Shown here piece by piece: positions 4,866-53,512 of a DNA stretch of 64,000 nucleotides (the stretch's first letter is position 1; each line of letters begins with the position of its first letter). Made by a program: the position numbers and the translations under genes. Below the pieces are notes generated by a model. That model worked only from the letters and a program-made list of their open reading frames with translations, was not told the DNA's origin and made no database searches. The DNA lies in the IMG/VR virus record IMGVR_UViG_3300027985_000918, positions 248,001 to 312,000 of that record; one strand, 5' to 3'.

Positions 4866-4880
4866 TATAGGCCATCTACA
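4866..4880 (-). promoter_or_regulatory. Candidate late promoter motif (TGT-N6-CCTATA)
   Basis: Minus-strand TGTAGATGGCCTATA, about 45 nt upstream of the ATG at 4822; one of six similar motifs. Confidence 0.55.
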
Positions 4881-6318: not shown

Positions 6319-6402
6319 TCACATCATCTCCAGGGCCAAGTTCTCAGAATCCTTGCGGGCCAGATACCCCCGTGCTACCCGGATGGCTGCATCCTTACCC
6401 AT
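6319..6402 (-). CDS. Putative 27-aa peptide MGKDAAIRVARGYLARKDSENLALEMM
   Basis: ATG overlaps the J-like stop (TGATG) and the ORF fills the gap before the next gene. Confidence 0.4.
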   Translation of the reverse strand: MGKDAAIRVARGYLARKDSENLALEMM

Positions 6403-13911: not shown

Positions 13912-16900
13912 TCACAAAACGTCCGGCTCATCGTCGGGGGGAGTGGGATCCAGTTCGGGCAGATTCTCCAAACCGAACACTGGGATCGGCTGATTGAACG
14001 ACGTAGACTGGTAGGGGTTGCTCGACCCATCGTCCAATTGCAAAAGCTCAACCAAGAAGGAAGGGACCAGAGGGGCCACGATGGCGACCCCGCCCCCGTA
14101 GGACAAAGAACTGTCCGAAGGCTTGTTGTCTGCCGTGATGAACTTCTGGAGGATGCCGTCAGTCCCAGAGGCGGACAGCAACAGGGCGGAGCACTGGGGG
14201 AGGCCAATCGAGAACCCAAGGATGCTTTGGATGAGAGAGTTGACCCGCCGGATCAAGTTCTGAAGCTCGATGATGCGGTCCTCGACGAACTCGATGTACC
14301 TGAGGATGGACTCGATGATGCCCTTGCTGGCCTCCGACAGAGCGTCAAGCCACTGCTGGAGGGTGTCGAAAAAGTTGTCTAGCCCCGGGAGGGTGTCCAA
14401 AAACCGAAGGGCAATCCACTCCCCATCCTGCGGAGGGCGGAGAGCTACTGCTGAGGCTACCCCGAGCACCAAAGCAGACTGGCTATACAGAATGCCGTCG
14501 TCATACTGCCTAAACAAGGTTCGACAGAAGTGAGCGCCCGCCAGGGCGGGGTCTACATCCGAAACCTGCTTGTCTTGAGCGGCCACCCGCATGGTGGAGG
14601 CATTGAAATAGAACACCGGAGACATGTCCGCAGAGCCCTGCTTCCTTGTCTGCCCCCGAAGGGCCTGCATGTAAGACACGACCTCCGATGGGATCCGAAT
14701 ACCCCCATCCTCTTGGATGTACCTCTCATAGAACATGCGAATGCTCGGAGAGGACTCTGCCAGCACTCCCAGTACCTGCTCGGCCGGGATCTCAACCTCG
14801 TAGTCCCACCCCTGAATGGAAGAGGGGTCCACCTCAATGAAATCCCCACGGCGCCCCCGGATGAGGGGATTCTGCGGGGTTAGCTTCAATACCGCCTCGA
14901 CCAACTCTTCTGGGACTTCCATGCTGTAGAGGTTCGGGGCGAACCCCAGCTCCCTCCAGACCCCCGGGGAAGGGGCAGGAATATCACTTAGGTCGGGGTG
15001 CAGGGGCTCTTTCCCCAGCTCTTCCTCCAAGCTGTTAATTTCGTCAATCAGGTCTCGGGTATCCGAGTCGTCGGCAGCCTCGAACATCTCCACCAAACGG
15101 TAGTCCGTGCTCAAGGCATCGAGCCGCTCGTTCTCCGAGGTGATAGCGTCTGCTCCGGGTTCCTCCCCGGCAGCTCTGAGAACGTCGAGAATGGTCGCAG
15201 ACCTCAGCTCGATGGTGTTCTGGGCGATGAACTCGTGGAGGTCAGGCCGAGCCCCGATCTGGTCCATCAAGTCCTTGGCATACCTTCGGCATCGCTCCAA
15301 AAGGTCCTGGCGGAATGCCTGAGGGCTCTGCCCCTTCTTCTCGATGTACGCCTTGAACCCTTCTCCCGGAAACATACGGTCGAGGATTCCTTTGTAGGGT
15401 TCCAGCGACGTAGGGATCAGAGCGACCCCGGGAACCATGAACTGGTGTTGCTTCGCCAGCTCCTTTTGGTCTTCCGGAAGCCCCTCCACCTCGTCGATGA
15501 GGGGAAGGTCTGACCGGCTCAGACAGAGAACCAAGAGAGCCGTGGTGACAGCGTCCAGGAACTCCTTTGTGTTGACGTTGGGGAGGGTAGCCTTGAAAGC
15601 AGGGCTCCATGCCGACTTCTCGGCGTTCTTCTCTTGGGGAACTCGGAACAGCCCTCCGGGGTCATTGCCTAGATCCTGCACCTTGTCGAAGTCGAGGGCA
15701 TACCCAGGGAAGGTACGAGACCCTTCCACGGTGTTCGCCAGAGCTTCCTCATCGAGAACCGAAGCGATACGAATGTAGTAGGTGTTGGCCTTGCCGAGAT
15801 CTTTGACCGTCACCTGCCCATCCGAACCCACCCTGAACTCTGCCTGGTGGGGCAGGTCCTCGTACTCGATGACGAGGCTGTATTCCTCGTTCGCCCAGGA
15901 GGCGAGCATGGACCCAGGGACAGCAAACGTCCGCTGGAGATAGTATGTGTCACCCTCCCGCAGTTGAGCGAGATCGATGACCTCCCCAGAGGCTCGGCTC
16001 TTGAGGCCATACACCGCAGTCAGGCCATCCTTGAACTGGTTGAGTCCTGCCACAACCCTGTTCCAGGAATGCCTCTCCACAGCCCCCGCCAGGAGGTCTT
16101 TGCCCCCATACAGAATGTAGGGCTGGCCGTTGCGGTCGAGTACCGTTCCCGCTTCTCGACGGGAACGCCGCTCAGACTCCCCGCTCTCCGGCTCCTTTTT
16201 CTTGGCGTCGTTCTCAGGACGATTGAATGCCAGAGGGATACCCTCTTCCCGAGTCCCGATGGTCACCAGGAAACCCGCAGGACCCACCGGAGAGAAAGGG
16301 TTAAAAGAAGACTTGCTCGAAGTAGGCTGGACCTTCCAGGTGACCTTCATCTTCTCGGGAGGGCCGGCCTCAATCCGCACCAGGTTCTCCAGGGCGTCGA
16401 AGACGTTCCCATTAGCCTGGTTGCCATGCTGGATGCCCGTTACCACCGGGACCGGGGGGGACCCGGAGGGGTTGAAGCTCTGGTTGAACATATCCAGGAG
16501 CTGGCGAACGAACTGAACCAGTCGGGAGATCCCCGAGAAATCCACCGACAAGTAGAAGAAAGCGGCGAACACCTCCACCGCTGAGGACACATCTGGGCGG
16601 GTGGGGTCCGTGAAATCGGTCATCCGGGCGACCATCCGCCGCTCGTACTCGGTGAACCCTCCCCGCAGGTCATCGTAGGGATGCTCCAGCAGAGCCCAGT
16701 CCCCCGTGATGTAGATCCCCAAATCCTTCAAGTTGTCAAGCAGGGCGTTGATCTGGTCGATGACGGCCTGCACCAAGGCGGCGAGGGGATCCAGGAAACC
16801 GACGGCAAACGCTTTGATGAGCTGAAGAGCTTCCAAAGCGATGTCCAGGAACGCCAGCAGAAACTCTGCGATGCTGTTGATCGCCTCCCGCACGTCTGTC

Positions 16901-16953
16901 AGGAAGTCCGGCAGCTCGAAGCTGATCGTCCCCCATTCCCCGAACCCCGCCAT
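13912..16953 (-). CDS. Large hypothetical virion protein with amphipathic helical termini
   Basis: 1013 aa, coupled to the upstream ORF (TAATG); both termini are long hydrophobic helical stretches. Confidence 0.75.
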   Translation of the reverse strand: MAGFGEWGTISFELPDFLTDVREAINSIAEFLLAFLDIALEALQLIKAFAVGFLDPLAALVQAVIDQINALLDNLKDLGIYITGDWALLEHPYDDLRGGFTEYERRMVARMTDFTDPTRPDVSSAVEVFAAFFYLSVDFSGISRLVQFVRQLLDMFNQSFNPSGSPPVPVVTGIQHGNQANGNVFDALENLVRIEAGPPEKMKVTWKVQPTSSKSSFNPFSPVGPAGFLVTIGTREEGIPLAFNRPENDAKKKEPESGESERRSRREAGTVLDRNGQPYILYGGKDLLAGAVERHSWNRVVAGLNQFKDGLTAVYGLKSRASGEVIDLAQLREGDTYYLQRTFAVPGSMLASWANEEYSLVIEYEDLPHQAEFRVGSDGQVTVKDLGKANTYYIRIASVLDEEALANTVEGSRTFPGYALDFDKVQDLGNDPGGLFRVPQEKNAEKSAWSPAFKATLPNVNTKEFLDAVTTALLVLCLSRSDLPLIDEVEGLPEDQKELAKQHQFMVPGVALIPTSLEPYKGILDRMFPGEGFKAYIEKKGQSPQAFRQDLLERCRRYAKDLMDQIGARPDLHEFIAQNTIELRSATILDVLRAAGEEPGADAITSENERLDALSTDYRLVEMFEAADDSDTRDLIDEINSLEEELGKEPLHPDLSDIPAPSPGVWRELGFAPNLYSMEVPEELVEAVLKLTPQNPLIRGRRGDFIEVDPSSIQGWDYEVEIPAEQVLGVLAESSPSIRMFYERYIQEDGGIRIPSEVVSYMQALRGQTRKQGSADMSPVFYFNASTMRVAAQDKQVSDVDPALAGAHFCRTLFRQYDDGILYSQSALVLGVASAVALRPPQDGEWIALRFLDTLPGLDNFFDTLQQWLDALSEASKGIIESILRYIEFVEDRIIELQNLIRRVNSLIQSILGFSIGLPQCSALLLSASGTDGILQKFITADNKPSDSSLSYGGGVAIVAPLVPSFLVELLQLDDGSSNPYQSTSFNQPIPVFGLENLPELDPTPPDDEPDVL

Positions 16954-17189
16954 TAGCTACCTCCCCCGTGCTTAATCAGGGCGAGCTTCTGCAAGGCCTC
17001 AGCCTTCTTGCCTTCCCACTCTGCGAGCTGCTGCTCCAGGATGCTGCGAAGGCTAAGGAGTGCCCGAGCCTGCTCGGTGGCAAATGCTGGACGAAACGTA
17101 GTCCCCCCACCGGCATCCCCCCAGGCCCCAGCCTTCCGGCCAATCTTCTCCAACTCCTGCCGAGCCTCTTCGGGTGTCAACGGTTTCAT
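16953..17189 (-). CDS. Small hypothetical coiled-coil protein
   Basis: 78 aa; overlaps both neighbours (ATGA and TAATG). Confidence 0.65.
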   Translation of the reverse strand: MKPLTPEEARQELEKIGRKAGAWGDAGGGTTFRPAFATEQARALLSLRSILEQQLAEWEGKKAEALQKLALIKHGGGS

Positions 17190-20100
17190 GAAGCGTTCTC
17201 CACAGATTCTTCGAGCCGGGCTACCCGCTCCGCCTCGGCCAGTCTCTTCGGAAGCTCTTCGTCGAAAAGGTCGATCCGCTGAAGAGTACCCCGTACCGTA
17301 TCAGTCCGATAGGCCAGCCAAGCGTAACGGGTAGGCCGGAACCTGTCCTCAATGTCCAGGACAATGTCCACCCTTTCTGGCAACACGGGCCTCACCGAGC
17401 TACCCCCATTGGCATCGGCCGAGAACGAGGTGTAGGCCCCCACCGGCTGGGCCAGGTCCACGTCTCCCGCCGTCGGGAAAGGGTTGACACCGTCGTAAGT
17501 CCTGCATCCGATGTTGGTGTCCGGCATCAACGAATCCAGGCGGCGATCTAGGACCCAGAATCGACGGTCCAAAATCGACAGGCAGTCCTCGGAGTTCAGA
17601 TACGGGGAGATGTTGACCTGCCCGATCAGACTCGTCACCGATACATTACCGAGCACCCCCAACCCGTCGAGAGGATCATTCGGGAGACCCACATCATGGG
17701 CGTGTAGCTCGTTCTGGAAGTCCCAGTAAGTACCATCCTTGCGCCCGCCCATGATAGACCGAAGCTCCTGAATCCAGGACAGAACCCGCTCCCGGTTCAT
17801 CAACACTAGGTCCACGGCCTCATCTGAGAAGAGCTGGCTCGGGCGGATGATGCGGTAAGAGAACGGGCGGATGGAGTGTGTATCCCCTGTGTAGGTCTCG
17901 TACCCCCCGATGGTTTCCCGCACCTTCGTCGGACGGAGATCCATCTGCCCCTCTCGGCCGTCGCCCGTCAGAGCCGAACCCGAGATGGTCGGAAGGATGG
18001 AGTACCCGAGGATCGGCTGGTAAGTGGCGTTCTCCGGAAACACCACATCCGTCGTAGTCCCCCCCACACGGGCTCCGGCCAATGTGCATGTCCCGTCCAC
18101 AACAAGGGTGGCCCCGTCGATGTCGGTGACCCGATAGAATCCCCGGTTGTCGTCCAGAATGTTGGGCTCACCCGGGTCGTATCCCGTCCTCTGAGGCCCC
18201 CCCGAGATGTAGGCCCCCACATCCCCGATGGGCCGTGCTCCCCGTTCGCCGGACTGGGGGATCTTGGGAGTCGGGTCGAGGATAACAATGTCCCCTCGGA
18301 GTACCCCCTTACTGGCCCAGCTTCCGGTGTTCTTGTCATCCCGCATTCGGTTGACCACCGAATCGTAGTCTGCCGTGACCGCCTCCACGTACCCACCTCT
18401 CTCAGTGGCATAGTCGGCATCGGTCCGGGTGACCTCCTTGAACGTGATCAGTTCCAGAAGCTGCTCGGCGCTCTGCTCGTGGGGAACCGGGGCCTGTCGG
18501 AGCCAGATCTCGAACCGCATACCCCCGTTAGCCTCCAAAGTGGCCTTCGGGGTCTGGAGGCCAGGGGCCTCCAGCTTCAGCTCAACCTCAGACAGCACCC
18601 CCACAATGGGAACCTGCTCGATGAGTGCCCCATCCTCATCCAAAAGGCGGAACATGTCCCCAGCATGGATGTTCACGTCGACACTGTTGAACGGCCCGAG
18701 GTTGGTACCCAAGAGTCCCGTCTCACCTCCGTTCCACACGTCCGGGGCCAGGGGGGCCGTGACGACATCGGCATTGTACGTCATGCCGAAGCCGTCCGCT
18801 TCTACCAAGCCGAACTGCTTGGCCGTCGTGCTGTAGGTTGTGATCCTACCTCGCCGAATCTCATAGGCGTACCGGAGGGGACCGAACTGATCCCCCAGGT
18901 CGTTGAACAGCCGATGGAACCGCCGGATACGGCGAACCTCGAACTGCACCGATTCAGGATTGGCATAGGGTACCCCGCTAGAGTTGTAGTCCGAGAAGTC
19001 CCTCACCCCCACCAAGGGGTAAGGGGCTGCCGTCCTCTCCACCAGGCGGGCCTGAGTGAAGCTGTAGGAATTGACGGGGGTCGGGAAACTCGGCTCCAAG
19101 AAGATGCCGCTCTGCGCCCAGAACCCCGGAGTTGGGCCTGTGGGATCTCCCAGGTACACCACCGTGTTGGGAAGCAAAGCTGCCACCCACTGCCCCGCCG
19201 AATGCCCCAGCGGGTCGTAGATGCTCCCCCAATCCAGATCCGGGACCGCCGACAAGTCGATGCTGCCCGCCACATGGGCGTACACCACAGGATCAGCATC
19301 GGCGTGGAACTGGTTGGCGGACACTCGGGCAGCCTCAGCTACCTCGATGGCTCCACCGCCACCCACATCCGTGATCTGCCCAGCAGTAGCGTCGTAGGTG
19401 ACGACAGCTCCGCCTGGTCCCTCGAAAGTCACCAGGCGGAACCCGTGGATGACCTCCTGAAGAGCGGTGAGGCTATGATGCCCAACCACGCTGGAGCTAT
19501 CTGGGAGGCCATTCCCCCGCACATCCACCGTCAGGGAATCGTGGCCGGCAACCATAAGCCCAGTGGTGTTGACCAGGTCCGTAGCGGCCACGGGAGTCCC
19601 TGTGGCATCCCGCAGATCATTGAGGGTGAACGTGGTAGGGGTCTTGAACGTGATGTTGCCAGACCACAGTGCCTGGGCGTACTCCGCCGCAGTAGCTGCC
19701 GACAGCTTCGTCAAGTCCCGGCAGATGAACACCCGGTTCCCTACCCCAGGGAACCTGGACGTGGAAGTGACGGTCAGCACCCCCGTGCCGGAATCCCAGC
19801 CCACCACCCGGGGGTACACCTCGGTGATCCACCCGCTGCCGCCCCCCGCCGTACAGGACAGCGTAACCTGGAGGACGTGGTTGATGGCGTCGTTCTCACC
19901 CACGGCGTGCTTGACCAGGTACGTCCCCGCTTTCGTACAGGCCCGGTGAGTGCCATCGTTGGACCGCTTGACGACCAAAACATCACCGGGCTCCACTCGG
20001 GCGAGGGCACCACTGTTGATGGTCGGGTCCATGACCCGCCCTTCAACCAGGGTGAACTGGACAGCAGAGAGGTCGGCGTTGTTCTCCGACTCCATGAACC

Positions 20101-23100
20101 CGCTGCCCGTGCAAATGGTCCCGAGAGGTCCCACATCCGACGACGGAATAGCGGAAAACTTGATGTCCGTGGCCCCTACGTTAGCATCCAGGATGCCCTC
20201 GAAGGCCACCGCCTTGATGGATCCCCCGACAGGAGAGGACCACGTCCCCCCCGCCAACTCGTTTGCGATGTCGGCGGCCGTCTTTCCAATGAATGTCAGT
20301 GGTGCCCCCCCGTTGACATTCCGGTTGATAGTGGACGACACCCCCGCCACGCAAGTGACCTCCTGCACCAGCAGGTCAGTCTCCAAACTGGTCGAGGAAC
20401 CCGGATGGGGATGCACACTTCCCCGAAGGCGAGCCTTGCGGAAGTCGATGACTTCATGGAAGGTTAGGCGGTCCTCGTCAATGTAAGCCGTGTCGCTTTC
20501 ACCCCGGGGGGCCGCCCAACCGTTGTACGTGTCGATGTCGATCGCTACGTCGTACTCGTACTTCAGGGCTCGGCGGTATCCCGCTGCCAGAGGGTTGAGC
20601 TGGGTGTACGGGACGAACCATGTCGAAGTGCTGTCCCCCGCCATCGGGGTGACCACCAAACGGAGGCCTCCCGTGTTCTCCGTCACCACCAGCTCACCCA
20701 CGTCACCGGGATGGTTCGCTTGAAGCCCCACCAAGTCCCCCACCGCACTGGCAACCGCCGAGATATTCAAGGGGGCCGCTGCCTGGATGAGAGCCTGGGA
20801 AGCAGGGTCATTGATCGCTGCCGCCAGGCTGGTGGCGGTAGCGATGGCTGACCCCGAACCGGCCACGTCGTCAAATTGCTGGAGGGCTGCCACGGCGCCG
20901 CCGTTGACCGCAGTGAACACAACTCCGCTGATCACAACCTGGTCACCGGCAGCACATCCGGGCAACACCTGCACAGAGCCCTGGGCCACAGGAAGACCCA
21001 GAAGAAGGTGGTCCATGAGGGAGCCCACGGATGCCCCAGTGATGACGATGTGGCGGTTTTGCTCGAAGGGCGCCCCCAAAGGAGCAGGGTCCGTCGTGCC
21101 AAAAACCGCCGAGAGCCCCAGGGCAGTAAGCCCTGGGAGCCCAGAGACCGTCTCCGTGACGGTCACATCCGTCCCCTGAATCACAATGCGGAACAACTCG
21201 TCCCCACCGTTCGGCATCGGGTTTCCGCTGGGGGTGTTCGTGATGAGGACATCATCACGGGCCAGGAACCTGACCGTGATTTTGTTGTTGGCCTTGGCCC
21301 CCGCTGCCGACCAGATGCTGTTCAGGTTGCCGGTCCCCGCCGCCGTCCCGTCGTTCAGGGCGAGCTGGGTGATGGAGCTGAAGTCCAGGACGAGAGTGTC
21401 GGTGACAGCATCCCCATTCGAGTCGTACTCGTACAGGAGGCATCCGCTGACGGGATCGTTCTGGGGGTCATCCCCTACGTACCCATCCACATGGACGATG
21501 GCGTTATTGAGGATGTACCTCACAGGAGAGCCCGTAGGGCCTCCTGGGGCCACCGGAGGCGTGGTCTGAGTGACGAACCGGGGTGGCTCAAGGAACGCAA
21601 CACCGGCGGCAGGAGAGGCCACTGCGGCCACGTTCAGCAGACCCTCGGCCCCCACGGGGACAGTCCCCTGGCCCACCTCCATCAACAGGAGGTCATAGGG
21701 ACGCAGGGCCTCTTCCCCCACCCCGGCCGGGAAGGGGTCCACACCAGCCATGAGCACGCCCGCCTCTTTCGTGGCGGGTCCTCCCTGGAAGGGGGTCCCC
21801 ACGTCTGCGAAGTTGTTGCCCGAGGTGTCCAAGATCTCGCCGTCGTTGCCGACGATCTCGTCAGGGTAGATGTACGTCCCGCCGCTCTGAGCGAACACCC
21901 CGAACAGGTTGGACATCACCGAGGCGTCGCCCAGACGGTCCAACTCCGTGTTCCCAGACCTCAGGTACGGGATGGCGTAGTCCCCATCGTCGTCCGTGGA
22001 CCCCCCCAGCAGTGCGGGGAACTCCAGAGGGAGGGTACGGTCGTACACGAACTCGACAGGGCCCTCCAGGGGGCTCAGCGGCCTCGGAGCCTTCTGGCCG
22101 AAGATCTCTTTAAGGCCAAAGAAGTAAGGATCATCGAAGCTGGGCAGGGTCGTGTCCACGATCCTCCCATCGGGCTTCACTGAGAAATCGAACCCATTAC
22201 GGAAGATGTCGATGGCCGACCCCATCTCACGCAGCTCGGCAATAGTCGGGGGGTCCGAGATTTCTACCCCTTTCCCAAGTGTCGGAGAAACGTAAATGGT
22301 GTCCCCCTGCTCCAGGGGGAACTCGTGGAGAGGAGTACCGAGAATTCCCTCGGTGCCCACCAGGATGTTGTTCGGATTGTCCAGGAGGGTACCGGAGCTG
22401 TCTGCAAATCGGATGAGGCACCCGAATTGCACATCATAGACATGCAGAGTGTCGAGTACGGGGGTTCCGAACACCGACAACAGACTGACGTTCTGTCCGA
22501 TGTGCGTGCTGCCGTCAGGCTGTCCCCAGAAGATCTGGTCCCCGGTCACGAAACCTGGGAGGGCCAGTTCGGGATCCCCAGCCTCAGCATCCGCCAGATC
22601 TCCACCTTGGGAGATGAGCCGACTCACGTCGAGAAGCCCCGACTCTGGGCTCACCGGAACCTCAGACAGGGGGAGCTGGGTGACGATCATGCAGGGTTCG
22701 ACGATGTCCGCTGCGGGAACCCCCACATCAAAAGCGTCCTGGAGGATGCCGTCCGGGAAGTACCCCCAAACCCTCGCCCTTGCCCGGCGAGGACGGAGTG
22801 CCGAGTCCGAAATGTTCGTGATGCCCCCCAGGACGGGGTTGCTCACCAAACCGATCTCCGATCCCGTCGTTCGCTTGATGCCGCCGTCGATGCTGCGACC
22901 ATAGGTATAGATGCCGGGATCTCCCGTGGCTTCATCTGCCCCAATACCCGGATAGGTTAGGAAAAACGCCTTGGCTTGAGTGGGGAACAGGCGGCTCAGG
23001 AAGTGGCTGGAGGACATCCTCTTGAAGTCCACCCCTCCCTGAAGGGAGAAGTACGGGTACACGGGGAGTAGCTTGATGCGGGGCCTTCGCTTGGATGCTG

Positions 23101-26100
23101 CCACCCGATCATCCACGTCGTTGGTCACCAGCATCCGCTGGTGGTCCATCAACCACTGAAGACGGTCGGCATCGGGGTACGGCCCACCCAGCACACCGTC
23201 CACCAGAGTTGCCGCCGTGGGCTCTACCAGGTTGTCAGTCTCCAAGAAGATAAGATCGTTCGAGGGGTCCGCCTCATTGACCACCATGCTCCACAGGTTC
23301 TTAGGCTGCAACACCCCGGTGATCTCATCCTCGTAGCCCGGGGTGGGCCACTCCAACCCCCGACCCACAAAGAACCGGAATTTGCCGTCCTTGTCCCCGA
23401 CGAAGCGTCCGTCGATAGTCTCGGTGATCTGCTCGAAAGCCATGATGGCCTGGTTGTAGTAGTCCAAAAGCACCCGGGCGGCCCGATCTTTGTCCACCAG
23501 GTGGCGGCGCTCCCAGATGAGGCTAGTGTTGCCCTTGTCCCAGTTTTCCTCCCCCTGAGTAGTCGTGGTGAGGGATCCCTTCCCCGCCTGATTGGCCTGA
23601 GCTTCCTTGACCGCCTCCCGAATTGCCTCTGCAAGGAAACTCGTTAGAGTGGGAATGCGGAAGTAGTACGTATCCGGGCTGCGGAAGCTGTATGTGGCCT
23701 GAAGCAGGCCTCCCAGGAGCCCATTGTCCCGATCCGGCAGCGTGTTGTACAGGTAGGTGGCGAACCCCCGGGGCTCTACCACCACTCCATCTTGCACGGT
23801 AGGGCTGAGGGTACGAAGACGGGTGTGGCTCAGGATGAGCTTCTGCCCAGGACCCAAGGGGGCCTGAACCGGCTCCAGCAGCTCAACCACTCCCGTAGTG
23901 GGATCCAGGCTGTACTCGATGTTGGGGATGAGGGTCCGACCCGGCAACTCGTTGCCGTTGACGTCCGTCTCCCCGAAAAGCACCAACTCATACCCCTCGG
24001 TGTCCACCAGCGGGCCGAGGGGGAGGAACGTCCGCACCCCCGGCGGATAGAGCGGCCGGTAGCTCAGTTTGACCGTGGAGACGTTGTCCATCGAAAGGCC
24101 CGTCTCCACTGGGGCGGTGAGCGTGATCTTGGTGTACGTGCCCTCGGGGTTCAGTTCCGCACTGGCGATGGTGAACGGGTAGCCCCCGATCTCCAGGATG
24201 TGCCCGGCGATGGCAAACTGAGTGAGGTTGCCACGGAAGTTGATGGTCTTCTGTCCCTTATTGACGGGCTCGAACGGAAACTCCGATAGAGGGACCGCTT
24301 GCATAAATCCTGCAGGGGCACTGGTCGTGACGGGATTAGTCCCGTCGGGGTCCACCGCAGTAGTAACGGGCCCTGCCGAAATGACCGTCAGGACATCGTG
24401 ACCAGGGGAACGGGTTCCGACCTCTCGGGAGGTCGGGGGGAAAATGTGAACCTTCGTGACATTCCCCGCCTTGACGATGGGCTTGACGGGGTTCAACGGG
24501 TTCCGTTCTTCCAGAGGGGTCGTCCGAGGCGGGAAGTATTCGACCGCCTTCACATAGAAGCAGTTTGCCCCCAAACGGATGAGCTGCCCCGGAAAGAAGT
24601 CTGCCAGTCGGTTTCCCTGGAGCCCAAAGCTATCCACCCCTGCCTTGAGGAAGAAGGGTGGGCGGTACACCGGAGCCGAAGACACGGTATAGGACCGCTC
24701 CCCCCCGTTGGCCTCCAGAACGGCGTAGCTCACCTGGACCGGGACGTGATCCGGAATGGTCTTGGAGAGGAACGTGATCTTGAACGGGTCTCCCGGATCA
24801 TCGGGGGACTCCAGGATGTAATCGTCCCCCTGGAAGTTCTGGATCATGGCCCCGATGAACACCGTGGGATCGATACGGGTGTCCACAGTCCGGCTGTCGG
24901 TGTTGAACGTGAACGTGAAATGGTTGACCCGAGTCGCTTCGGTCTTGGTAACGAAGACCGGCAGGAACTCTTCGACCAGTTCACCCTCCTTGCGCCCTTC
25001 CATGTCAGCCTGGTAGTACCGCACCTCCACCGACTGGAGTGCCTGAAGGGGCTGCTGGAACCCCACGGTGCCTGCAATGGGATTCAAAGACACGTCGAGG
25101 CCATTCTCCGTGATCATCTGCTCGACGAAGTACACCCTCTTTCCGGCATGGGAGATCTGATCAGCACTCCCAATGTTCAGCAGCCCCGAATCCGGGTTGT
25201 ACTCGGCCATCCCGGAAACCATGTCAGCAGAAGCCCGGAACTCTTCCTGGTAGGTAACCCGAGCTTTGGCGTACCTGCTCAGCAGATCATCTGCGAACTT
25301 GATTCTCCCTGCGGGGTCCACCCCCACAGACTGAGTCAGTACCTCGACAGCCCCAGCCGGAACAGGGTCCGAAAAAACCCCGACATGAACAGGGGTGAAC
25401 TTATCCGCCCCAACCCGCAGGGAATACCGGATGCCCGTGAACCTGGTGGATCCCACCCCGGGGACATCCAGAAGGTTGTTTGCGATAGCCCCCAGAACCT
25501 CCCGGCTAAGAGGCGTCAGGATGGCCGAGTTCGTTCCGTCATCATGGGCCAAACCAAACCGGATGGAAATCACCCTCCCTCGGGAGACTGCCCCCTCTAC
25601 ATTGGCGGTGAGGGCCCCTCCCACAAATCCCAGAGGAGAAAGTACGTTGACCTTAAACGGCTCATCGGGAAGGTGGCTGAAGTTCTGGTACACCTGGTCG
25701 GCTACCACCGCCGGGTCGTACACGTCCTCCGAATACCCCCGGTACAGCTCCCACGGAATGGCCTGAAGGGCTTGCGCCAGGAAGGGGGGCTTTACTCCCA
25801 ACTCCGTCCCGCTGCTCACGGATTCCACAAGGTAGGAGCCCGCCTCATCCCCGGACAGGAGCTTAAGGCGATAACCCTCTCGGACAACAGGAAGGTAGAC
25901 TGCGGCACCCCCGGAGAATAGGGGATTTCCTTCCGTGTCCGTGGCCTGCTCTTCCGACGGCTCCAGGAAGTTGGCCGCCGGGTCCGTGAACAGGCTCCCC
26001 CCCGCAGAGTAGGCCCCCCTTCCCCCGAACAAAGCCAGGTCCCCGTACCTCGTAATGAGCACGGCGTTTCCTGGGATCCCGTCGTTGGGGAGCAGGTAAT

Positions 26101-28888
26101 CCTCACCCAACACCTGAAACGAGAACGCCCCCCCCTCGGACACCAGGAGCCCCCCTCCGATCCCTGGAGCATTCAGCAACGAGTTGCCGATGACGGAAGC
26201 AGATCCCAGGTCGATAGTTGTTGTAGGTTGCTGGAAAGTCGTGCTCAGAGAGCCTTCGGCCAGCCACAGGAAACGGCGCTCTGCGAAGTCGTGGAGGATG
26301 TCTTCGTAGTGAATGAGGGGCTTGTTGACTACCACCACCCCGTCCGGGTCTTCAATGGCGGTGACCAGGTTGAAGAACACCCCGTCCGAGTAACCCGCCA
26401 CATCTTGGAGGGGCGGATTCTGAAAGAACACGAAGGGGCCGGGCTGGACGGACTCCTGGACGATGGCGTCTTCGATACGGTCGAACGCCTTGAAATCGGG
26501 AATCCCTTTGGCCCTCCCCCGGTTCCTGGGACTGCGGTACAGCCCCAGGGCAACCCCGGAATCAGGTAGCCAGTTGTCCACTCCGCCCTGCGCCCGCCAA
26601 CCCGGAAGGAACCCGAGCTTGGCTGCCCCGGACAGATCCTTCACTGGCCCGCCCCATCCAACCTCCACCGTCCCCGTCGCCGGATCCCCCGCCTCCAGAA
26701 CGACCGACCCGTTGGAGGCATAGGCCCTACCCGTCCCAGAGATTGCGGCATTGATCGAATCAGCCACTTCCTCCGGGGTGAAGTAGTCCTTGTCTGGGTA
26801 GGCAGTCAACAGGGTGTTCGAGTTCCAAGAGTATCCCGACCCGTCGGTGCTGAAGTACAGCACCTCACCCCCCTCGAACCGGAACACAAACCGGGTCTTG
26901 GAGTACAAGCGGGCGGCCGTCGTGTGGGCAGAAGGCGTCAGGCTGGCCTGGAGGAAATAGGCAGCGTCGGCTCCTTTCTCCTTGAGGTCTGCACGGCTCA
27001 TCTTGAGCACCGACCCCAGACCATCGGAGAACTCACGGGAGATGTAGCAGACCCCCTTGGGGATGCTATGGGAGGTCGAGGGGAGGTCATCCTCCCGGTC
27101 CACCACCACCACCGACATGGCACCCTTGCGGGTGAACACGATGGTGTCCCCTACCGTGTCCTCCACCTGACGGATTCGTCCTTTGGCGTTAGCAGCAAAC
27201 GTATCGCCTCCAGGACGAACATCGGCCGGCGCCCCAGAACCCGCGGGGGCGACCCCTGTGCCGTCGGGGAAATCCATGACCCCCGAAACACCCAACCCCC
27301 GCTGCGGGCTGTTGAGAACGAACTCGTCGGGAAGGACGACAGCATCCGGGATGTACAGCTTCCCGCTGTTCTCCACAACCTGGGCGGGGGCCGTAGTGGG
27401 CTGAGGAAGGCCCGACAGACTGAGGCCGTCGTACACCACTTTGGCACCCAGATAATGCTTGTCGAACCGATCGGAGTCCGGATCCGTACTCCCCACCAGC
27501 CCCGGGGAGAACAGCAGCTTCCCTGTGGACAAAGATACCCCCACCTGGCCATCCGGCATCAACAAACCGGACAGCTCGGCGTCGTCCTCGACCAGGATGG
27601 GGGTCAAATACTTGCGTGACCCCACTCGGAGGAGGGGCCTATCCGTGGGAGACGGGATGGGGGTGATGAACAGAGTGTCGTGCGGGCTCAATTCCCCAAT
27701 GACGCCCGTACTTTCCGGAGCAAAATCACGATTGACGTACCAGACAGTCTTCCCGGCGTGCAGCTCGACGTAGGACGGGTTAAACACCAGCATCCCGTTG
27801 GTTAGGCCAACGACTCCGATGAGCTGGGGCTCCAGGGAGAAGTCAAAGCCTTCCTCCACCTGCTTGTCCAGGCGTACCCCGATCCCCAGAAAACTCCCGT
27901 CGGGGCCTGCTGCGGTACTGAGCCCATCCGGAGAGGACCCCAGACGGATCATGGCGTAGCTGTCAGAGACTGCCCCATTCCCGGGCAGGAAAAAACCGTT
28001 CTTGAGCCCCCTCGGTTTGGGGGATAGCTGGTAGACCTGATCGAACTCCAGACGGCCGAGGTCCCTCGGGGCATTGCCCTTGTACGGCTCCCAACGCTGG
28101 TTCTGCCCGTTCCACCCAAACCTAACTTGGTAACGATCGTTCCTGGTCCAGTAGAACCGGGGAGCAGCAATGGTGTACCGCACCTCGATGACTGTATCAC
28201 CTCGGGCTACACTGAGACCCCCCCCGAGGGCCGTAGAGATGTCACTCGCTACCAGACCGGATCCGGTAGGCCTGAAGATGTTGTCGTCCGTGAGGGTGAC
28301 CAAACCTGAGGAGGGGTCCGAATCCCCTCCCTGAGGCTGAACTACCAGGTATGGGATGTTTCCCTTGCGTCCGGAAGTAGGGTTCTCAGCATCCACCCAG
28401 CCGGCGTCGTCGTACTCCACATCCCCCCGGGCCACTACCAGGAACAGGATGCTCCCGATGCTGCGGAACCCATCGTCCTTGACGACGGCCTTTAGGGTCC
28501 CGTCTACCTGAGTCCCATACCCCGAAGGGATAGGCTGACCCTCGGGCCACGGATCCGGGTCATTGTCCGTGACCGTCAGGGAACCTTGGGGGATGATCCC
28601 CTCTCCCGTATCTACCCACCAGGCGGGGTCGTCGATAAGGGAGAGATTGGATGTGTTCTCCGCCCAGAACATGTACTCGACAGGGGTACTACCGGGGGAA
28701 TTGAGCACGGCCGTGCGGTACTGGTCCGCACGCACGTCCGCAAAGTCGGGGGCACCCAGAGTGTAGTCTGGCGGAAGGTCATCGGAAAGGGCACGGACGA
28801 CTCCACTGTCTGCGTCAGCCGTCTCGGGAGAGTTCGTCGGCGCAGACCGGGGGGGCCGGAGGACGTATCCTGAGAAGTCAAAACCCAT
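17186..28888 (-). CDS. Giant (3900 aa) virion structural protein, probably baseplate-associated
   Basis: Uninterrupted 11.7-kb ORF, Gly/Val/Asp/Pro-rich, located between spike and wedge genes. Confidence 0.8.
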   Translation of the reverse strand: MGFDFSGYVLRPPRSAPTNSPETADADSGVVRALSDDLPPDYTLGAPDFADVRADQYRTAVLNSPGSTPVEYMFWAENTSNLSLIDDPAWWVDTGEGIIPQGSLTVTDNDPDPWPEGQPIPSGYGTQVDGTLKAVVKDDGFRSIGSILFLVVARGDVEYDDAGWVDAENPTSGRKGNIPYLVVQPQGGDSDPSSGLVTLTDDNIFRPTGSGLVASDISTALGGGLSVARGDTVIEVRYTIAAPRFYWTRNDRYQVRFGWNGQNQRWEPYKGNAPRDLGRLEFDQVYQLSPKPRGLKNGFFLPGNGAVSDSYAMIRLGSSPDGLSTAAGPDGSFLGIGVRLDKQVEEGFDFSLEPQLIGVVGLTNGMLVFNPSYVELHAGKTVWYVNRDFAPESTGVIGELSPHDTLFITPIPSPTDRPLLRVGSRKYLTPILVEDDAELSGLLMPDGQVGVSLSTGKLLFSPGLVGSTDPDSDRFDKHYLGAKVVYDGLSLSGLPQPTTAPAQVVENSGKLYIPDAVVLPDEFVLNSPQRGLGVSGVMDFPDGTGVAPAGSGAPADVRPGGDTFAANAKGRIRQVEDTVGDTIVFTRKGAMSVVVVDREDDLPSTSHSIPKGVCYISREFSDGLGSVLKMSRADLKEKGADAAYFLQASLTPSAHTTAARLYSKTRFVFRFEGGEVLYFSTDGSGYSWNSNTLLTAYPDKDYFTPEEVADSINAAISGTGRAYASNGSVVLEAGDPATGTVEVGWGGPVKDLSGAAKLGFLPGWRAQGGVDNWLPDSGVALGLYRSPRNRGRAKGIPDFKAFDRIEDAIVQESVQPGPFVFFQNPPLQDVAGYSDGVFFNLVTAIEDPDGVVVVNKPLIHYEDILHDFAERRFLWLAEGSLSTTFQQPTTTIDLGSASVIGNSLLNAPGIGGGLLVSEGGAFSFQVLGEDYLLPNDGIPGNAVLITRYGDLALFGGRGAYSAGGSLFTDPAANFLEPSEEQATDTEGNPLFSGGAAVYLPVVREGYRLKLLSGDEAGSYLVESVSSGTELGVKPPFLAQALQAIPWELYRGYSEDVYDPAVVADQVYQNFSHLPDEPFKVNVLSPLGFVGGALTANVEGAVSRGRVISIRFGLAHDDGTNSAILTPLSREVLGAIANNLLDVPGVGSTRFTGIRYSLRVGADKFTPVHVGVFSDPVPAGAVEVLTQSVGVDPAGRIKFADDLLSRYAKARVTYQEEFRASADMVSGMAEYNPDSGLLNIGSADQISHAGKRVYFVEQMITENGLDVSLNPIAGTVGFQQPLQALQSVEVRYYQADMEGRKEGELVEEFLPVFVTKTEATRVNHFTFTFNTDSRTVDTRIDPTVFIGAMIQNFQGDDYILESPDDPGDPFKITFLSKTIPDHVPVQVSYAVLEANGGERSYTVSSAPVYRPPFFLKAGVDSFGLQGNRLADFFPGQLIRLGANCFYVKAVEYFPPRTTPLEERNPLNPVKPIVKAGNVTKVHIFPPTSREVGTRSPGHDVLTVISAGPVTTAVDPDGTNPVTTSAPAGFMQAVPLSEFPFEPVNKGQKTINFRGNLTQFAIAGHILEIGGYPFTIASAELNPEGTYTKITLTAPVETGLSMDNVSTVKLSYRPLYPPGVRTFLPLGPLVDTEGYELVLFGETDVNGNELPGRTLIPNIEYSLDPTTGVVELLEPVQAPLGPGQKLILSHTRLRTLSPTVQDGVVVEPRGFATYLYNTLPDRDNGLLGGLLQATYSFRSPDTYYFRIPTLTSFLAEAIREAVKEAQANQAGKGSLTTTTQGEENWDKGNTSLIWERRHLVDKDRAARVLLDYYNQAIMAFEQITETIDGRFVGDKDGKFRFFVGRGLEWPTPGYEDEITGVLQPKNLWSMVVNEADPSNDLIFLETDNLVEPTAATLVDGVLGGPYPDADRLQWLMDHQRMLVTNDVDDRVAASKRRPRIKLLPVYPYFSLQGGVDFKRMSSSHFLSRLFPTQAKAFFLTYPGIGADEATGDPGIYTYGRSIDGGIKRTTGSEIGLVSNPVLGGITNISDSALRPRRARARVWGYFPDGILQDAFDVGVPAADIVEPCMIVTQLPLSEVPVSPESGLLDVSRLISQGGDLADAEAGDPELALPGFVTGDQIFWGQPDGSTHIGQNVSLLSVFGTPVLDTLHVYDVQFGCLIRFADSSGTLLDNPNNILVGTEGILGTPLHEFPLEQGDTIYVSPTLGKGVEISDPPTIAELREMGSAIDIFRNGFDFSVKPDGRIVDTTLPSFDDPYFFGLKEIFGQKAPRPLSPLEGPVEFVYDRTLPLEFPALLGGSTDDDGDYAIPYLRSGNTELDRLGDASVMSNLFGVFAQSGGTYIYPDEIVGNDGEILDTSGNNFADVGTPFQGGPATKEAGVLMAGVDPFPAGVGEEALRPYDLLLMEVGQGTVPVGAEGLLNVAAVASPAAGVAFLEPPRFVTQTTPPVAPGGPTGSPVRYILNNAIVHVDGYVGDDPQNDPVSGCLLYEYDSNGDAVTDTLVLDFSSITQLALNDGTAAGTGNLNSIWSAAGAKANNKITVRFLARDDVLITNTPSGNPMPNGGDELFRIVIQGTDVTVTETVSGLPGLTALGLSAVFGTTDPAPLGAPFEQNRHIVITGASVGSLMDHLLLGLPVAQGSVQVLPGCAAGDQVVISGVVFTAVNGGAVAALQQFDDVAGSGSAIATATSLAAAINDPASQALIQAAAPLNISAVASAVGDLVGLQANHPGDVGELVVTENTGGLRLVVTPMAGDSTSTWFVPYTQLNPLAAGYRRALKYEYDVAIDIDTYNGWAAPRGESDTAYIDEDRLTFHEVIDFRKARLRGSVHPHPGSSTSLETDLLVQEVTCVAGVSSTINRNVNGGAPLTFIGKTAADIANELAGGTWSSPVGGSIKAVAFEGILDANVGATDIKFSAIPSSDVGPLGTICTGSGFMESENNADLSAVQFTLVEGRVMDPTINSGALARVEPGDVLVVKRSNDGTHRACTKAGTYLVKHAVGENDAINHVLQVTLSCTAGGGSGWITEVYPRVVGWDSGTGVLTVTSTSRFPGVGNRVFICRDLTKLSAATAAEYAQALWSGNITFKTPTTFTLNDLRDATGTPVAATDLVNTTGLMVAGHDSLTVDVRGNGLPDSSSVVGHHSLTALQEVIHGFRLVTFEGPGGAVVTYDATAGQITDVGGGGAIEVAEAARVSANQFHADADPVVYAHVAGSIDLSAVPDLDWGSIYDPLGHSAGQWVAALLPNTVVYLGDPTGPTPGFWAQSGIFLEPSFPTPVNSYSFTQARLVERTAAPYPLVGVRDFSDYNSSGVPYANPESVQFEVRRIRRFHRLFNDLGDQFGPLRYAYEIRRGRITTYSTTAKQFGLVEADGFGMTYNADVVTAPLAPDVWNGGETGLLGTNLGPFNSVDVNIHAGDMFRLLDEDGALIEQVPIVGVLSEVELKLEAPGLQTPKATLEANGGMRFEIWLRQAPVPHEQSAEQLLELITFKEVTRTDADYATERGGYVEAVTADYDSVVNRMRDDKNTGSWASKGVLRGDIVILDPTPKIPQSGERGARPIGDVGAYISGGPQRTGYDPGEPNILDDNRGFYRVTDIDGATLVVDGTCTLAGARVGGTTTDVVFPENATYQPILGYSILPTISGSALTGDGREGQMDLRPTKVRETIGGYETYTGDTHSIRPFSYRIIRPSQLFSDEAVDLVLMNRERVLSWIQELRSIMGGRKDGTYWDFQNELHAHDVGLPNDPLDGLGVLGNVSVTSLIGQVNISPYLNSEDCLSILDRRFWVLDRRLDSLMPDTNIGCRTYDGVNPFPTAGDVDLAQPVGAYTSFSADANGGSSVRPVLPERVDIVLDIEDRFRPTRYAWLAYRTDTVRGTLQRIDLFDEELPKRLAEAERVARLEESVENAS

Positions 28889-28893: not shown

Positions 28894-29490
28894 CTACACC
28901 ACCACCGAAGTCGTCAAGGTAACCCCGGCCGAAGGTCCGGGAACTCCTACCACACTACCAGTCCCAAACCCCAGAGCAACGCATCCTGCAATGCCATTGC
29001 CGAGCCCGACCGCCATCAAGGGCATGGCAATCCCCGGACCGCTCAAGGCTGCGAGGTTGGACTGGAGCAAAGCGATGAGGGTGGCGGGATTGGACACGAC
29101 CACCTTCGACACGTCTGCTCCCACACCTACTCCGGGGGAGACCCCCAGGTAGCTCCCTGAGAGGGTGAATGCGCTTGGAACAGCCGTGCCCACGATAGTT
29201 CCCAGGGACACCCCCAGCGGGCCCCCCAGTCCAGCGGACGCCAGGGCGCCGATGACGAGAGAAGGATTGGGAGGAACCACCAGCTTACCGGACGGAATGG
29301 TGCCGCCCCCCACAGTTCCGCTGGCAGTCCCTTGCAGGGCCACGTTCTGGGGCTGGCTGATTGCCCATCCTGCTACGCTCATGGCAATTCCGGCGGCGAG
29401 GCGGTCGAACTGAAGCCCCACCATCGGAAAAGGGCAGGCAGCACGGGCCGACTGGAGATTAGCCAGGAAGATGGAGGGGTTCAGAGGCAT
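28894..29490 (-). CDS. Gly/Ala/Val-rich hypothetical baseplate protein
   Basis: 198 aa, almost uncharged; directly follows the spike-like gene. Confidence 0.7.
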   Translation of the reverse strand: MPLNPSIFLANLQSARAACPFPMVGLQFDRLAAGIAMSVAGWAISQPQNVALQGTASGTVGGGTIPSGKLVVPPNPSLVIGALASAGLGGPLGVSLGTIVGTAVPSAFTLSGSYLGVSPGVGVGADVSKVVVSNPATLIALLQSNLAALSGPGIAMPLMAVGLGNGIAGCVALGFGTGSVVGVPGPSAGVTLTTSVVV

Positions 29491-53494: not shown

Positions 53495-53512
53495 CTTCGT
53501 ACCTCTCTTCAA

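What the first reader, a model, noticed from the sequence alone, without database searches (positions are those of the whole stretch)
17186..28888. 3900-aa single-ORF virion protein
Seen: an 11.7-kb ORF with no obvious tandem DNA repeats but recurring turn motifs (DPSSGLVTL, LTNGMLVF, LSTGKLLF, NPDSGLLNI, NPIAGTVGF, DPTTGVVEL) suggesting a chain of beta-domains. Its size is exceptional for tail proteins. Inference: a giant baseplate scaffold or fibre specific to this phage lineage.
Basis: partly seen in the sequence, partly recalled or inferred. Interest (0 to 1): 0.6.

Follow-up and report, generated by a model that had tools for sequence, protein, structure and literature searches.

The report
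Giant conserved huge-phage baseplate-module protein
The 11.7-kb gene is real and encodes a 3,900-residue, mostly beta-sheet protein of no known family. It is conserved as one piece in hundreds of uncultured huge phages, and it most likely forms a compact building block of their tail baseplate rather than a fibre.

Summary
The ORF is real: window 17186-28888, minus strand, 3,900 aa, no tandem repeats. The window lies in a 402-kb phage record with terminal repeats, from a hydrothermal-vent metagenome.

The protein has no Pfam or PDB sequence relative and only one weak PHROGs hit. It does have more than 130 full-length homologues of 3,300-3,980 aa, and a wider tier of 2,000-4,100 aa. All are unnamed and metagenomic, and none is in a cultured phage. 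Homologues that looked split coincide with scaffold N-gaps.

The gene sits in the contractile-tail module. The order is sheath, tape-measure-like protein, lysin/hub-like, spike-like, a 198-aa uncharged protein, the giant, a 78-aa protein, a 1,013-aa protein, a 292-aa protein, gp25-like, then baseplate J. This order holds even for 2,164-2,244-aa relatives. The giant, the small protein and the ~1,000-aa protein overlap stop-to-start and stay together where the other tail genes are scattered.

AlphaFold models of aa 1-1200 and 2790-3900 are confident (pLDDT 85, pTM 0.76-0.78). They are compact and mostly beta, and match no known global fold. Only single domains resemble the sheath/flagellin outer domain or gpJ/EF-Tu-type barrels.

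My best reading is a compact baseplate structural protein, not a fibre or tape measure. Presence in the virion is untested.

The parts
17186..28888 (-). Giant ORF, 3,900 aa (about 430 kDa by my estimate), P0001
   Evidence: More than 130 full-length homologues. 367 clusters at 50% identity match the middle-third profile.
28799..28888 (-). aa 1-30: N-terminal peptide, conserved in sequence but predicted unstructured. Candidate docking segment (inference).
   Evidence: Consensus MxFDFxGxVLRxPRxAPxNA in A1/A2. pLDDT 31-41.
26582..26917 (-). aa 658-769: domain like the outer, surface-exposed domain of phage tail sheaths, flagellin D2/D3 and FliD
25706..26053 (-). aa 946-1061: small beta-barrel of the type found in T5 Dit, lambda gpJ, tailspike N-terminal parts and E1 FCCH
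24110..24652 (-). aa 1413-1464 and aa 1542-1593: the only detectable internal duplication, a small barrel-like unit
   Evidence: Window-HMM against the protein, i-E 8.7e-5
20489..21571 (-). aa ~2440-2800: the one hypervariable, indel-rich region of the family
   Evidence: Conservation 0.08-0.35 and gaps up to 0.89, against ~0.5 and <0.1 elsewhere
20555..20986 (-). aa 2635-2778: inserted ~115-145-aa domain, nearly unique to this phage and its closest relative. Copies occur in two other genes of the same genome.
   Evidence: tblastn against the own genome: 58% identity over 118 aa at G000 329339-329692, and 39% over 151 aa at 327948-328373. Pairwise E 1e-23 and 6e-14. Three tandem copies in the 657-aa protein.
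19541..19819 (-). aa 3024-3116: small beta-barrel
18473..18880 (-). aa 3337-3472: EF-Tu domain-2-like / lambda gpJ-like beta-barrel
17192..17824 (-). aa 3689-3899: mainly helical C-terminal region ending in a ~30-residue helix. Highly conserved, Arg-rich motifs lie upstream of it.
   Evidence: DSSP of model mb0fe297072ee. Invariant columns in A3/A8.
16953..17189 (-). 78-aa helical protein. Its ATG overlaps the giant's TGA (ATGA). Its C-terminus is a conserved ..KHGGG.
   Evidence: A small ORF follows the giant in every relative inspected.
13912..16953 (-). 1,013-aa protein (P0126) with amphipathic helical N- and C-termini. Its ATG overlaps the small gene's TAA. It is the giant's most constant neighbour.
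   Evidence: The homologue stays next to the giant in LR745208.1 (E 5e-39) and in L005, where baseplate J is elsewhere.
28894..29490 (-). 198-aa Gly/Ala/Val-rich, almost uncharged protein. It ends 5 nt before the giant's ATG.
29497..31890 (-). 797-aa protein, spike-like. My reading of the sequence: an OB-fold motif of the gpV/gp5 type and a beta-helix-like C-terminal half. No database hit.
   Evidence: No Pfam or PHROGs hit.
31894..37140 (-). 1,748-aa protein with an SxHxxGxAxD-type motif. My reading is a LAS-type cell-wall peptidase, so a hub or tail-lysin candidate.
   Evidence: A distant relative carries an SLT domain in the protein at the equivalent position.
39278..42571 (-). 1,097-aa tape-measure-like protein (Ala 12%, Gly 13.5%, Pro 1.2%, Met 4%)
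   Evidence: Composition. Position after the sheath/tube region. GC skew -0.25. No family hit.
48176..53512 (-). 1,778-aa tail sheath
   Evidence: phrog_2839 E 1.2e-23
13025..13903 (-). 292-aa conserved module protein, unknown role
9928..11085 (-). gp25 / sheath-initiator-like protein
   Evidence: PF10934 E 5e-5, below the curated cut-off. phrog_2669 E 8e-6.
6402..9917 (-). Baseplate J / gp6-like wedge protein, 1,171 aa
   Evidence: PF04865 E 2.7e-19. phrog_6 E 5e-26.
1799..6306 (-). 476-aa protein (position of P2 gpI / T4 gp7) and 1,007-aa 'baseplate protein'
   Evidence: phrog_20556 E 1e-6 for the 1,007-aa protein. The role of the 476-aa protein is inferred from position only.

Best explanation
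The gene encodes a single ~430-kDa, mostly beta-sheet, multi-domain structural protein of the contractile-tail baseplate/hub module. It is found in a large clade of uncultured huge phages.

Shown:
- The ORF is intact and is conserved end to end as one polypeptide.
- It keeps a fixed place in the late tail operon, between a spike-like gene and the gp25-like and J genes.
- Its stop overlaps the start of a 78-aa helical protein, whose stop overlaps the start of a ~1,000-aa protein.
- These three stay together even in genomes where the tail genes are scattered.
- Its N- and C-terminal thirds are predicted as compact, rigid assemblies of small beta domains of the kinds used on the outside of sheaths, flagella and tail tips.

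Inferred:
- It is built into the virion as a compact block of the baseplate. I favour an enlarged outer or hub-proximal layer, with one or a few copies per sixfold unit, over a fibre.
- It is assembled together with the two co-translated partners.
- The conserved but unstructured first ~30 residues and the conserved helical C-terminus serve as docking elements.
- The single hypervariable stretch (aa ~2440-2800) accepts whole-domain insertions. It would then be the solvent-exposed face, and possibly the face that meets the host envelope.
For: ORF and start.

Phage context: a 402-kb record with direct terminal repeats.

Tail module: sheath phrog_2839, gp25-like and baseplate J, tape-measure-like composition.

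Family: more than 130 full-length homologues at 33-69% identity, on contigs up to 530 kb. 367 clusters at 50% identity match the middle-third profile, 297 of them at E<=1e-30, and they include 2,000-3,100-aa versions.

Synteny: identical in L003, L004 and L006 and in two loci without DNA. It also holds for the 2,244- and 2,164-aa distant versions.

The giant + small + ~860-aa cassette persists apart from J, sheath and spike in LR745208.1, and in L005 its flanks within 10 kb are non-structural genes.

Overlapping stop/start codons.

Models: pLDDT 85.4 / pTM 0.78 and pLDDT 85.1 / pTM 0.76.

Domain-level matches to the sheath/flagellin outer domain and to gpJ/Dit/EF-Tu-D2 barrels.

BFVD: the only matches below 1e-3 are large 'baseplate J-like', 'tail sheath' and cyanophage 'virion structural' proteins, with 'baseplate wedge initiator' just above that threshold (3.1e-3), though at TM<=0.08.

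Divergence: 40-44% identity for the giant, against 34-38% for the ~1,000-aa partner and 43-58% for the other neighbours over 100 aa.

Variable region and inserted domain.

Five further large ORFs (1,816-2,114 aa) lie downstream of J, where fibres are usually encoded.
Against: - No experiment or proteome places the protein in a virion, and no cultured relative exists.
- The middle third (aa 1201-2400) was not modelled.
- In LR745208.1 the cassette sits about 24 kb from J, 90 kb from the sheath and 230 kb from the spike, and in L005 it has non-structural flanks. Linkage to the baseplate is therefore common, not universal.
- The partner genes have no assignable function either.
Confidence: 0.5

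Rival explanations
1. Central tail-tip or host-specificity protein, playing the role of lambda gpJ or T5 pb3. It would sit under or around the spike on the tail axis and engage the envelope directly.
For: The gene follows the spike-like gene and a 198-aa uncharged protein. Several barrels resemble gpJ, Dit and tail-tip barrels. The nearest ESM-Atlas shapes for the C-terminal third are gpJ/TipJ clusters.
Against: Atlas TM is <=0.28 and Foldseek against PDB is not significant. No Phage-tail_3, Tip or FN3 gpJ domain is found by Pfam. In LR745208.1 the spike homologue lies 230 kb away. The barrels are generic folds.
Confidence: 0.15
2. Not a baseplate brick but a protein delivered into or onto the host. 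It could be an ejected pilot or conduit complex, or another infection-stage assembly, formed with the uncharged 198-aa protein, the 78-aa protein and the helical ~1,000-aa protein.
For: The cassette can live away from baseplate genes. The upstream partner is extremely hydrophobic and Gly-rich. The ~1,000-aa partner has long amphipathic helices at both ends. Giant ejected virion proteins are known from other phages, such as the N4 virion RNA polymerase (my own knowledge).
Against: A compact, confidently packed beta-rich body of 430 kDa is an unlikely passenger for a tail tube. No enzymatic or polymerase domain is detected over 3,900 aa. Most family members keep it inside the baseplate operon.
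Confidence: 0.15
3. Tail fibre or receptor-binding protein.
For: Large size, beta-rich composition and recurring turn motif. A small gene lies directly downstream, as for fibre chaperones. One hypervariable region exists.
Against: There are no repeats, coiled coil or beta-helix array. pTM of 0.76-0.78 indicates compact packing, not beads on a string. The C-terminal 600 aa are among the best conserved parts. The divergence rate matches core proteins. Other large ORFs occupy the usual fibre position.
Confidence: 0.08
4. Tape measure protein of an exceptionally long tail.
For: It lies between the sheath and the baseplate genes and is very long.
Against: Composition is 7% Pro and 11% Gly, and the modelled 2,311 residues are mostly beta. 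A separate 1,097-aa protein with tape-measure-like composition lies upstream in the canonical place.
Confidence: 0.02
5. Assembly artefact or recent gene fusion.
For: Some database entries are short pieces. Two loci (L010, L011) call the gene in several parts.
Against: More than 130 independent full-length single ORFs come from many samples. Both split cases carry runs of N at or beside the frame changes. The short pieces lie on short contigs. The contigs laid on the window show no differences.
Confidence: 0.01

Closest known systems
T4 gp7 'baseplate wedge initiator' and its enlarged homologues in cyanomyophages
   Same: It is the largest protein of its baseplate gene module. It is a compact chain of many unlike beta domains, conserved like a core component. 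BFVD lists cyanophage 'baseplate wedge initiator' and 'virion structural protein' entries among the weak matches.
   Different: There is no sequence similarity (no specific PHROGs hit and no Pfam hit). TM is <=0.08. The gene lies upstream of gp25 and J, not after J. A 476-aa protein already occupies the gpI/gp7 position. It is three to four times larger than T4 gp7 (1,032 aa, my own knowledge).
Lambda gpJ / TipJ central tail-tip proteins
   Different: No Phage-tail_3 or gpJ Ig/FN3 families are detected. TM is <=0.28. This is a contractile tail with its own spike-like protein.
Outer domains of tail sheath proteins, flagellin D2/D3 and FliD
   Different: It is one domain out of a 3,900-aa protein. 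No sheath core is present, and the phage has its own 1,778-aa sheath.
Unannotated very large proteins of huge phages (Al-Shayeb et al. 2020, PMC7162821)
   Same: That paper notes predicted proteins of up to 7,694 aa, 'some tentatively annotated as structural'. The one phage-database homologue, LR745208.1, is a 485-kb uncultured phage genome.
   Different: I found no description of this family, its synteny or its fold in the library searched.

Membership tests
Tape measure protein | Long, predominantly alpha-helical, proline-poor protein encoded after the tail chaperones | tested here: not met
   7% Pro. The modelled 2,311 residues are mostly beta. Another gene (39278-42571) fits the description.
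Baseplate J / T4 gp6 (PF04865) | Match to the Baseplate_J profile | tested here: not met
   No Pfam hit at E<=1. The J protein is a separate gene at 6402-9917.
Lambda gpJ / TipJ | Phage-tail_3 / Phage_Tail_Tip / Ig_J domains, or a global fold match | tested here: not met
   No Pfam hit. Foldseek against PDB E>0.01. Atlas TM<=0.28.
T4 gp7-like wedge initiator | Sequence or fold similarity to gp7, and a position after the gp6/J gene | tested here: not met
   No PHROGs hit of that kind. The BFVD matches to cyanophage gp7-like entries have E 3e-3 to 7e-3 and TM 0.05. The gene lies upstream of gp25 and J.
Tail fibre / receptor-binding protein | Elongated repetitive shaft (repeats, coiled coil or beta-helix) with a variable distal (usually C-terminal) domain | tested here: not met
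   No repeats. Compact models. Conserved C-terminus.
Tail fibre / receptor-binding protein | Homotrimeric assembly | not tested
Virion structural protein (any) | Physical presence in purified particles | not testable with these tools
   There is no cultured relative. No RNA or proteome data were found, and only DNA runs hold the sequence.
Conserved tail-module gene of this huge-phage clade | Same neighbours and order across divergent genomes | tested here: met
   The partial exceptions are LR745208.1 and L005.

The most novel reading that the evidence does not exclude
The giant, the 78-aa ..KHGGG protein and the ~1,000-aa helical-ended protein, often with the uncharged 198-aa protein, form a previously undescribed apparatus of huge-phage tails. 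In it a single 0.4-MDa polypeptide of new architecture replaces the multi-protein outer baseplate, or forms an envelope-spanning device. Its exposed insertion hot-spot would exchange domains with other genes of the same phage.
Probability: 0.25. Interest if true: 0.65.

Novelty: new variant of a known kind. Interest (0 to 1): 0.45.

Why it matters
Huge phages are known almost only from metagenomes, and most of their structural genes have no assigned role.

This family is large: 367 clusters at 50% identity match one third of the protein. It is strictly single-chain, reaches about 4,100 aa, and has no Pfam, PDB or informative PHROGs relative. Even so, it folds confidently in silico.

It marks a conserved and easily recognised piece of the tail module of a whole clade, found in groundwater, marine and hydrothermal samples. 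It is also a defined target for structural work on how very large contractile tails are built.

Its one hypervariable, insertion-tolerant stretch is a candidate for a host-range determinant.

The practical result for the scan is modest. 'Fibre' is unlikely, and the exact role remains an inference.

Tried and rejected
- **Internal repeats by hhalign:** two all-against-all runs of 150-aa windows timed out. I replaced them with window HMMs searched against the protein, which found one weak duplication.
- **The protein-atlas search:** two calls failed on length. The two valid calls gave only unnamed viral clusters at scores 0.81-0.85, below the tool's reliability range.
- **PDB sequence searches:** the protein gave only a plastocyanin-like hit at aa 360-407 (E 1.7e-4). 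The family profile gave nothing below E 0.2. Profiles of the neighbours A4, A5 and A6 gave nothing.
- **Fold searches:** Foldseek against PDB found no match at E<=1e-3 for either model. The VIA second looks added no new domains.
- **Domain-apart word searches:** the C-terminal (A8) and N-terminal (A2) searches returned fragments of the same family plus one distant 1,880-aa relative. No shorter kin appeared.
- **Complex prediction:** As the tool's own text advises, I left that row out (A12) and sent that sequence nowhere else. The job was unanswered once and then ran. The verdict was 'no answer', score 0.00. This is no evidence for or against binding of the 78-aa protein to the giant's C-terminus.
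- **Downstream large ORFs and paralogue-bearing genes:** Pfam and PHROGs gave nothing useful.
- **Literature:** no paper mentions LR745208 or this family.
- **Rejected ideas:** tape measure, gene fusion or misassembly, and simple fibre. Reasons are under the rival explanations.
- **Operator rules:** no alternative genetic code was used.

Full report
**1. The observation**

The window holds one uninterrupted ORF at 17186-28888 on the minus strand, with an ATG start and 3,900 codons. Tandem Repeats Finder reports only a 16-nt hexamer run, and BLASTP of the protein against itself finds nothing. A generalised form, [DN]P..G.[LIVM].[LIVMF], occurs five times against 0.2 expected from 500 shuffles, so the recurrence is real but small.

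HMMs built from 150-residue windows and searched against the protein detect a single internal duplication, aa 1413-1464 with aa 1542-1593, at i-E 8.7e-5. The protein is thus a mosaic of unlike domains, not a repeat array.

The start is supported by a conserved N-terminus in homologues. It lies 5 nt after the stop of the upstream gene. Contigs from two public runs carry positions 19000-24900 without a single difference. Those runs may be the source sample, so this is a consistency check only.

**2. Where it lies**

The window is bases 248001-312000 of a 402,383-bp virus record with direct terminal repeats and 60% G+C. The runs that hold it are labelled hydrothermal-vent metagenome.

All the large genes around the ORF are on the minus strand. 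In the order of transcription they are:
- a 1,778-aa tail sheath (phrog_2839, E 1.2e-23);
- several small proteins;
- a 1,097-aa protein with tape-measure-like composition (Pro 1.2%, Ala+Gly 25%, Met 4%);
- proteins of 266 and 443 aa;
- a 1,748-aa protein with a LAS-peptidase-like SxHxxGxAxD motif (my reading);
- a 797-aa protein whose N-terminus has the gpV/gp5-type OB motif and whose C-terminal half looks beta-helical (my reading; no database support);
- a 198-aa Gly/Ala/Val-rich protein with almost no charged residues;
- the giant;
- a 78-aa helical protein;
- a 1,013-aa protein with amphipathic helical ends;
- a 292-aa protein;
- a gp25/sheath-initiator-like protein;
- a 1,171-aa baseplate J protein (PF04865, E 2.7e-19);
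- a 476-aa protein and a 1,007-aa 'baseplate protein'.

The giant's TGA overlaps the ATG of the 78-aa gene, and that gene's TAA overlaps the ATG of the 1,013-aa gene.

Five more large ORFs (1,816, 1,235, 1,264, 1,969 and 2,114 aa) continue downstream of the baseplate genes. That is where fibres are usually encoded. None has a family match.

**3. Relatives**

Pfam gives nothing at E<=1. PHROGs gives only a weak plastocyanin-like hit at aa 362-393, matched by PDB 1bxu at aa 360-407 (E 1.7e-4). This probably marks a cupredoxin-like sandwich.

Among 50,697 phage records only LR745208.1, a 485-kb uncultured phage, has a homologue. It is again one ORF, of 3,642 aa, at 31-33% identity over the whole length.

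The word-indexed search found 133 proteins. Nearly all are 3,300-3,980 aa, lie on contigs up to 530 kb, and are named 'hypothetical protein' or not at all.

An exhaustive profile search with the middle third (aa 1201-2400) found 367 clusters at 50% identity. Of these, 297 are at E<=1e-30. They include a second tier of 2,000-3,100-aa proteins and a few above 4,000 aa. These are also unnamed and metagenomic, and one of them tested against the phage collection matched no cultured phage.

The shorter versions share the N-terminal and middle parts colinearly. The C-terminal third is recognisable in a 3,039-aa version but not in the ~2,000-2,250-aa ones.

Searching the C-terminal and N-terminal parts on their own returned only fragments of the same family on short contigs, plus one distant 1,880-aa relative.

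Two loci in which the gene is called in pieces (L010, L011) have runs of N at or beside the frame changes, so these are scaffolding artefacts.

**4. Conservation pattern**

In a 33-sequence alignment the protein is conserved along its whole length, with mean column identity 38% and hundreds of invariant Gly, Pro, Asp, Arg and aromatic positions. The exception is aa ~2440-2800.

Within that stretch, aa ~2600-2790 are almost unique to this phage and its closest relative. Of these, aa 2635-2778 are copies of a domain of about 115 aa. The same domain is present once in a 396-aa protein and three times in a 657-aa protein, both encoded at 327.9-329.7 kb of the same genome. Neither protein has any family, PDB or phage-database match.

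Against the genomes behind L003, L004 and L006, the giant is 40-44% identical. Its neighbours of more than 100 aa are 34-58% identical: spike-like 47-51%, J 50-55%, gp25-like 53-58% and the 1,013-aa protein 34-38%. The giant therefore evolves like a core structural component, not like a receptor-binding protein.

**5. Synteny across the family**

The following order recurs in L003, L004, L006, L011 and two loci without DNA: spike-like (~800 aa), ~197 aa, giant, 67-79 aa, ~870-1,020 aa, ~300 aa, gp25-like, J (~1,160 aa), ~430-470 aa.

With shorter members, the same order holds around the 2,244-aa and 2,164-aa distant homologues.

Two genomes depart from it.
- In L005 the flanks are non-structural genes, yet the 197-aa, giant, 78-aa and 852-aa genes remain together.
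- In LR745208.1 the giant, a 72-aa ORF and an 867-aa homologue of the 1,013-aa protein (E 5e-39) stay adjacent. J is 24 kb away on the other strand, the sheath 90 kb away and the spike homologue 230 kb away.

The tightest unit is therefore giant + small protein + ~1,000-aa protein.

**6. Structure**

With 57-sequence alignments, AlphaFold2 gave confident models for aa 2790-3900 (pLDDT 85.4, pTM 0.78) and aa 1-1200 (pLDDT 85.1, pTM 0.76). Both are mostly beta strand. The last ~210 residues are helical and end in a 30-residue helix. The first ~30 residues are conserved in sequence but unstructured.

A pTM this high for 1,100-1,200 residues means that the domains are predicted to pack into one body, not to hang as beads on a string.

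- aa 658-769 resembles the outer domain of tail sheaths (XM1, E217, A-1(L), PhiTE), flagellins and FliD;
- aa 946-1061, 3024-3116 and 3337-3472 are small barrels of the EF-Tu-domain-2, E1-FCCH, lambda gpJ or T5 Dit kind.

Against predicted viral structures, 20 matches fall below E 1e-3. They are mostly large 'baseplate J-like', 'tail sheath' and cyanophage 'virion structural' proteins, with 'baseplate wedge initiator' entries and phage G gp211 just above that threshold (E 3-7e-3). TM-scores are <=0.08, so this reflects a shared repertoire of small domains and not a shared architecture. The ESM-Atlas shape search places gpJ/TipJ clusters nearest to the C-terminal third, at TM<=0.28.

**7. Interpretation**

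The evidence supports a real, ancient, single-chain component of the tail/baseplate module of a large clade of uncultured huge phages. It is co-translated with two partner proteins and built of domain types that decorate the outside of tails and flagella.

I read it as a compact structural block of an enlarged baseplate (confidence about 0.5). The variable, insertion-tolerant stretch would be its exposed face.

- It is not the tape measure. Its composition and fold are wrong, and another gene fits that role.
- It is unlikely to be a fibre. It is compact, has no repeats, has a conserved C-terminus, and diverges at the rate of core proteins.
- A central tail-tip role of the gpJ kind cannot be excluded, nor can a role as an ejected or envelope-spanning complex with its hydrophobic and helical partners. 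The cassette's independence from J in two genomes keeps the second option alive.

Nothing here shows that the protein is in the particle.

A complex prediction between the C-terminal 611 residues and the 78-aa protein gave no verdict. It counts neither way.

**8. Novelty**

[quoted passage not shown] I found no description of this family, its cassette or its fold.

It is best called a new variant of a known kind, a contractile-tail structural protein with no recognisable family or global fold. It is not a categorically new system.

**Procedural notes**

I left it out, as the tool's text instructs, and sent it nowhere else. No alternative genetic code was used.

Noticed in passing
window 11241-12305 (+): A 354-aa ORF on the strand opposite to the whole tail operon matches Pfam DUF4419 at E 1.7e-69. 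It sits in a ~1.9-kb gap between the 292-aa gene and the gp25-like gene. Relatives have nothing or only a tiny ORF there, so it looks like a lineage-specific inserted gene.
   Followed up: partly
window 56970-57998 (-): A 342-aa protein matches Pfam PF25216 'Volactin' over its full length at E 2.2e-69. This is an actin-family protein encoded by a huge phage, a few kb upstream of the sheath gene.
   Followed up: no
window 16953-17189 (-) and homologues (A10/A12): The 78-aa protein co-translated with the giant ends in a conserved ..KHGGG. The three final glycines are invariant in 7 sequences. A terminal Gly-Gly motif recalls ubiquitin-like or leader-peptide processing, but nothing was tested.
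   Followed up: partly
window 28894-29490 (-): A 198-aa protein with 17% Gly, 13% Ala and 13% Val has almost no charged residues. It is conserved and always lies between the spike-like gene and the giant. It seems to consist of two similar halves. Its function is unknown.
   Followed up: partly
L014 (G000:C1:324001-334000) 2829-4802 (-) and 4904-6094 (-); window 20555-20986: A domain of about 115 aa (pattern GD.i.I.GV.FTA ... TA.sLa.AIND) occurs three times in a 657-aa protein, once in a 396-aa protein, and once as an insertion in the giant's variable region. It has no Pfam, PHROGs, PDB or phage-database match.
   Followed up: partly
G000:C1 222798-249744 (L015, L016; window 2-1744 is the start of the last one): Five further large minus-strand ORFs (2,114, 1,969, 1,264, 1,235 and 1,816 aa) follow the baseplate genes. 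None has a meaningful family hit. LR745208.1 has homologues of the 1,816-aa protein (next to its J gene) and the 2,114-aa protein, but not of the 1,969-aa one. They are candidate fibres or outer baseplate parts.
   Followed up: partly
window 48176-53512 (-): The tail sheath protein is 1,778 aa, several times the usual size. Only its C-terminal ~350 residues match a sheath profile. Weak hits to DUF2460 and DUF4815 occur in the N-terminal part.
   Followed up: no
L010 (TARA scaffold) 1-12061: A marine relative of the giant spans more than 4,100 aa, called as parts of 3,458+ and 686 aa that meet near a 10-N gap. The family therefore reaches beyond the size seen here.
   Followed up: partly
window 27668-27811 (aa 360-407 of the giant): The only sequence-level database hit of the whole protein is plastocyanin-like (PDB 1bxu, E 1.7e-4; phrog_515, E 0.009). 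It probably marks a cupredoxin-like beta sandwich without implying copper binding.
   Followed up: no
window 39278-42571 (-): The tape-measure-like gene has a strongly negative GC skew (-0.25 on the + strand) and 55% G+C against ~60% elsewhere. This reflects its unusual amino-acid composition.
   Followed up: no
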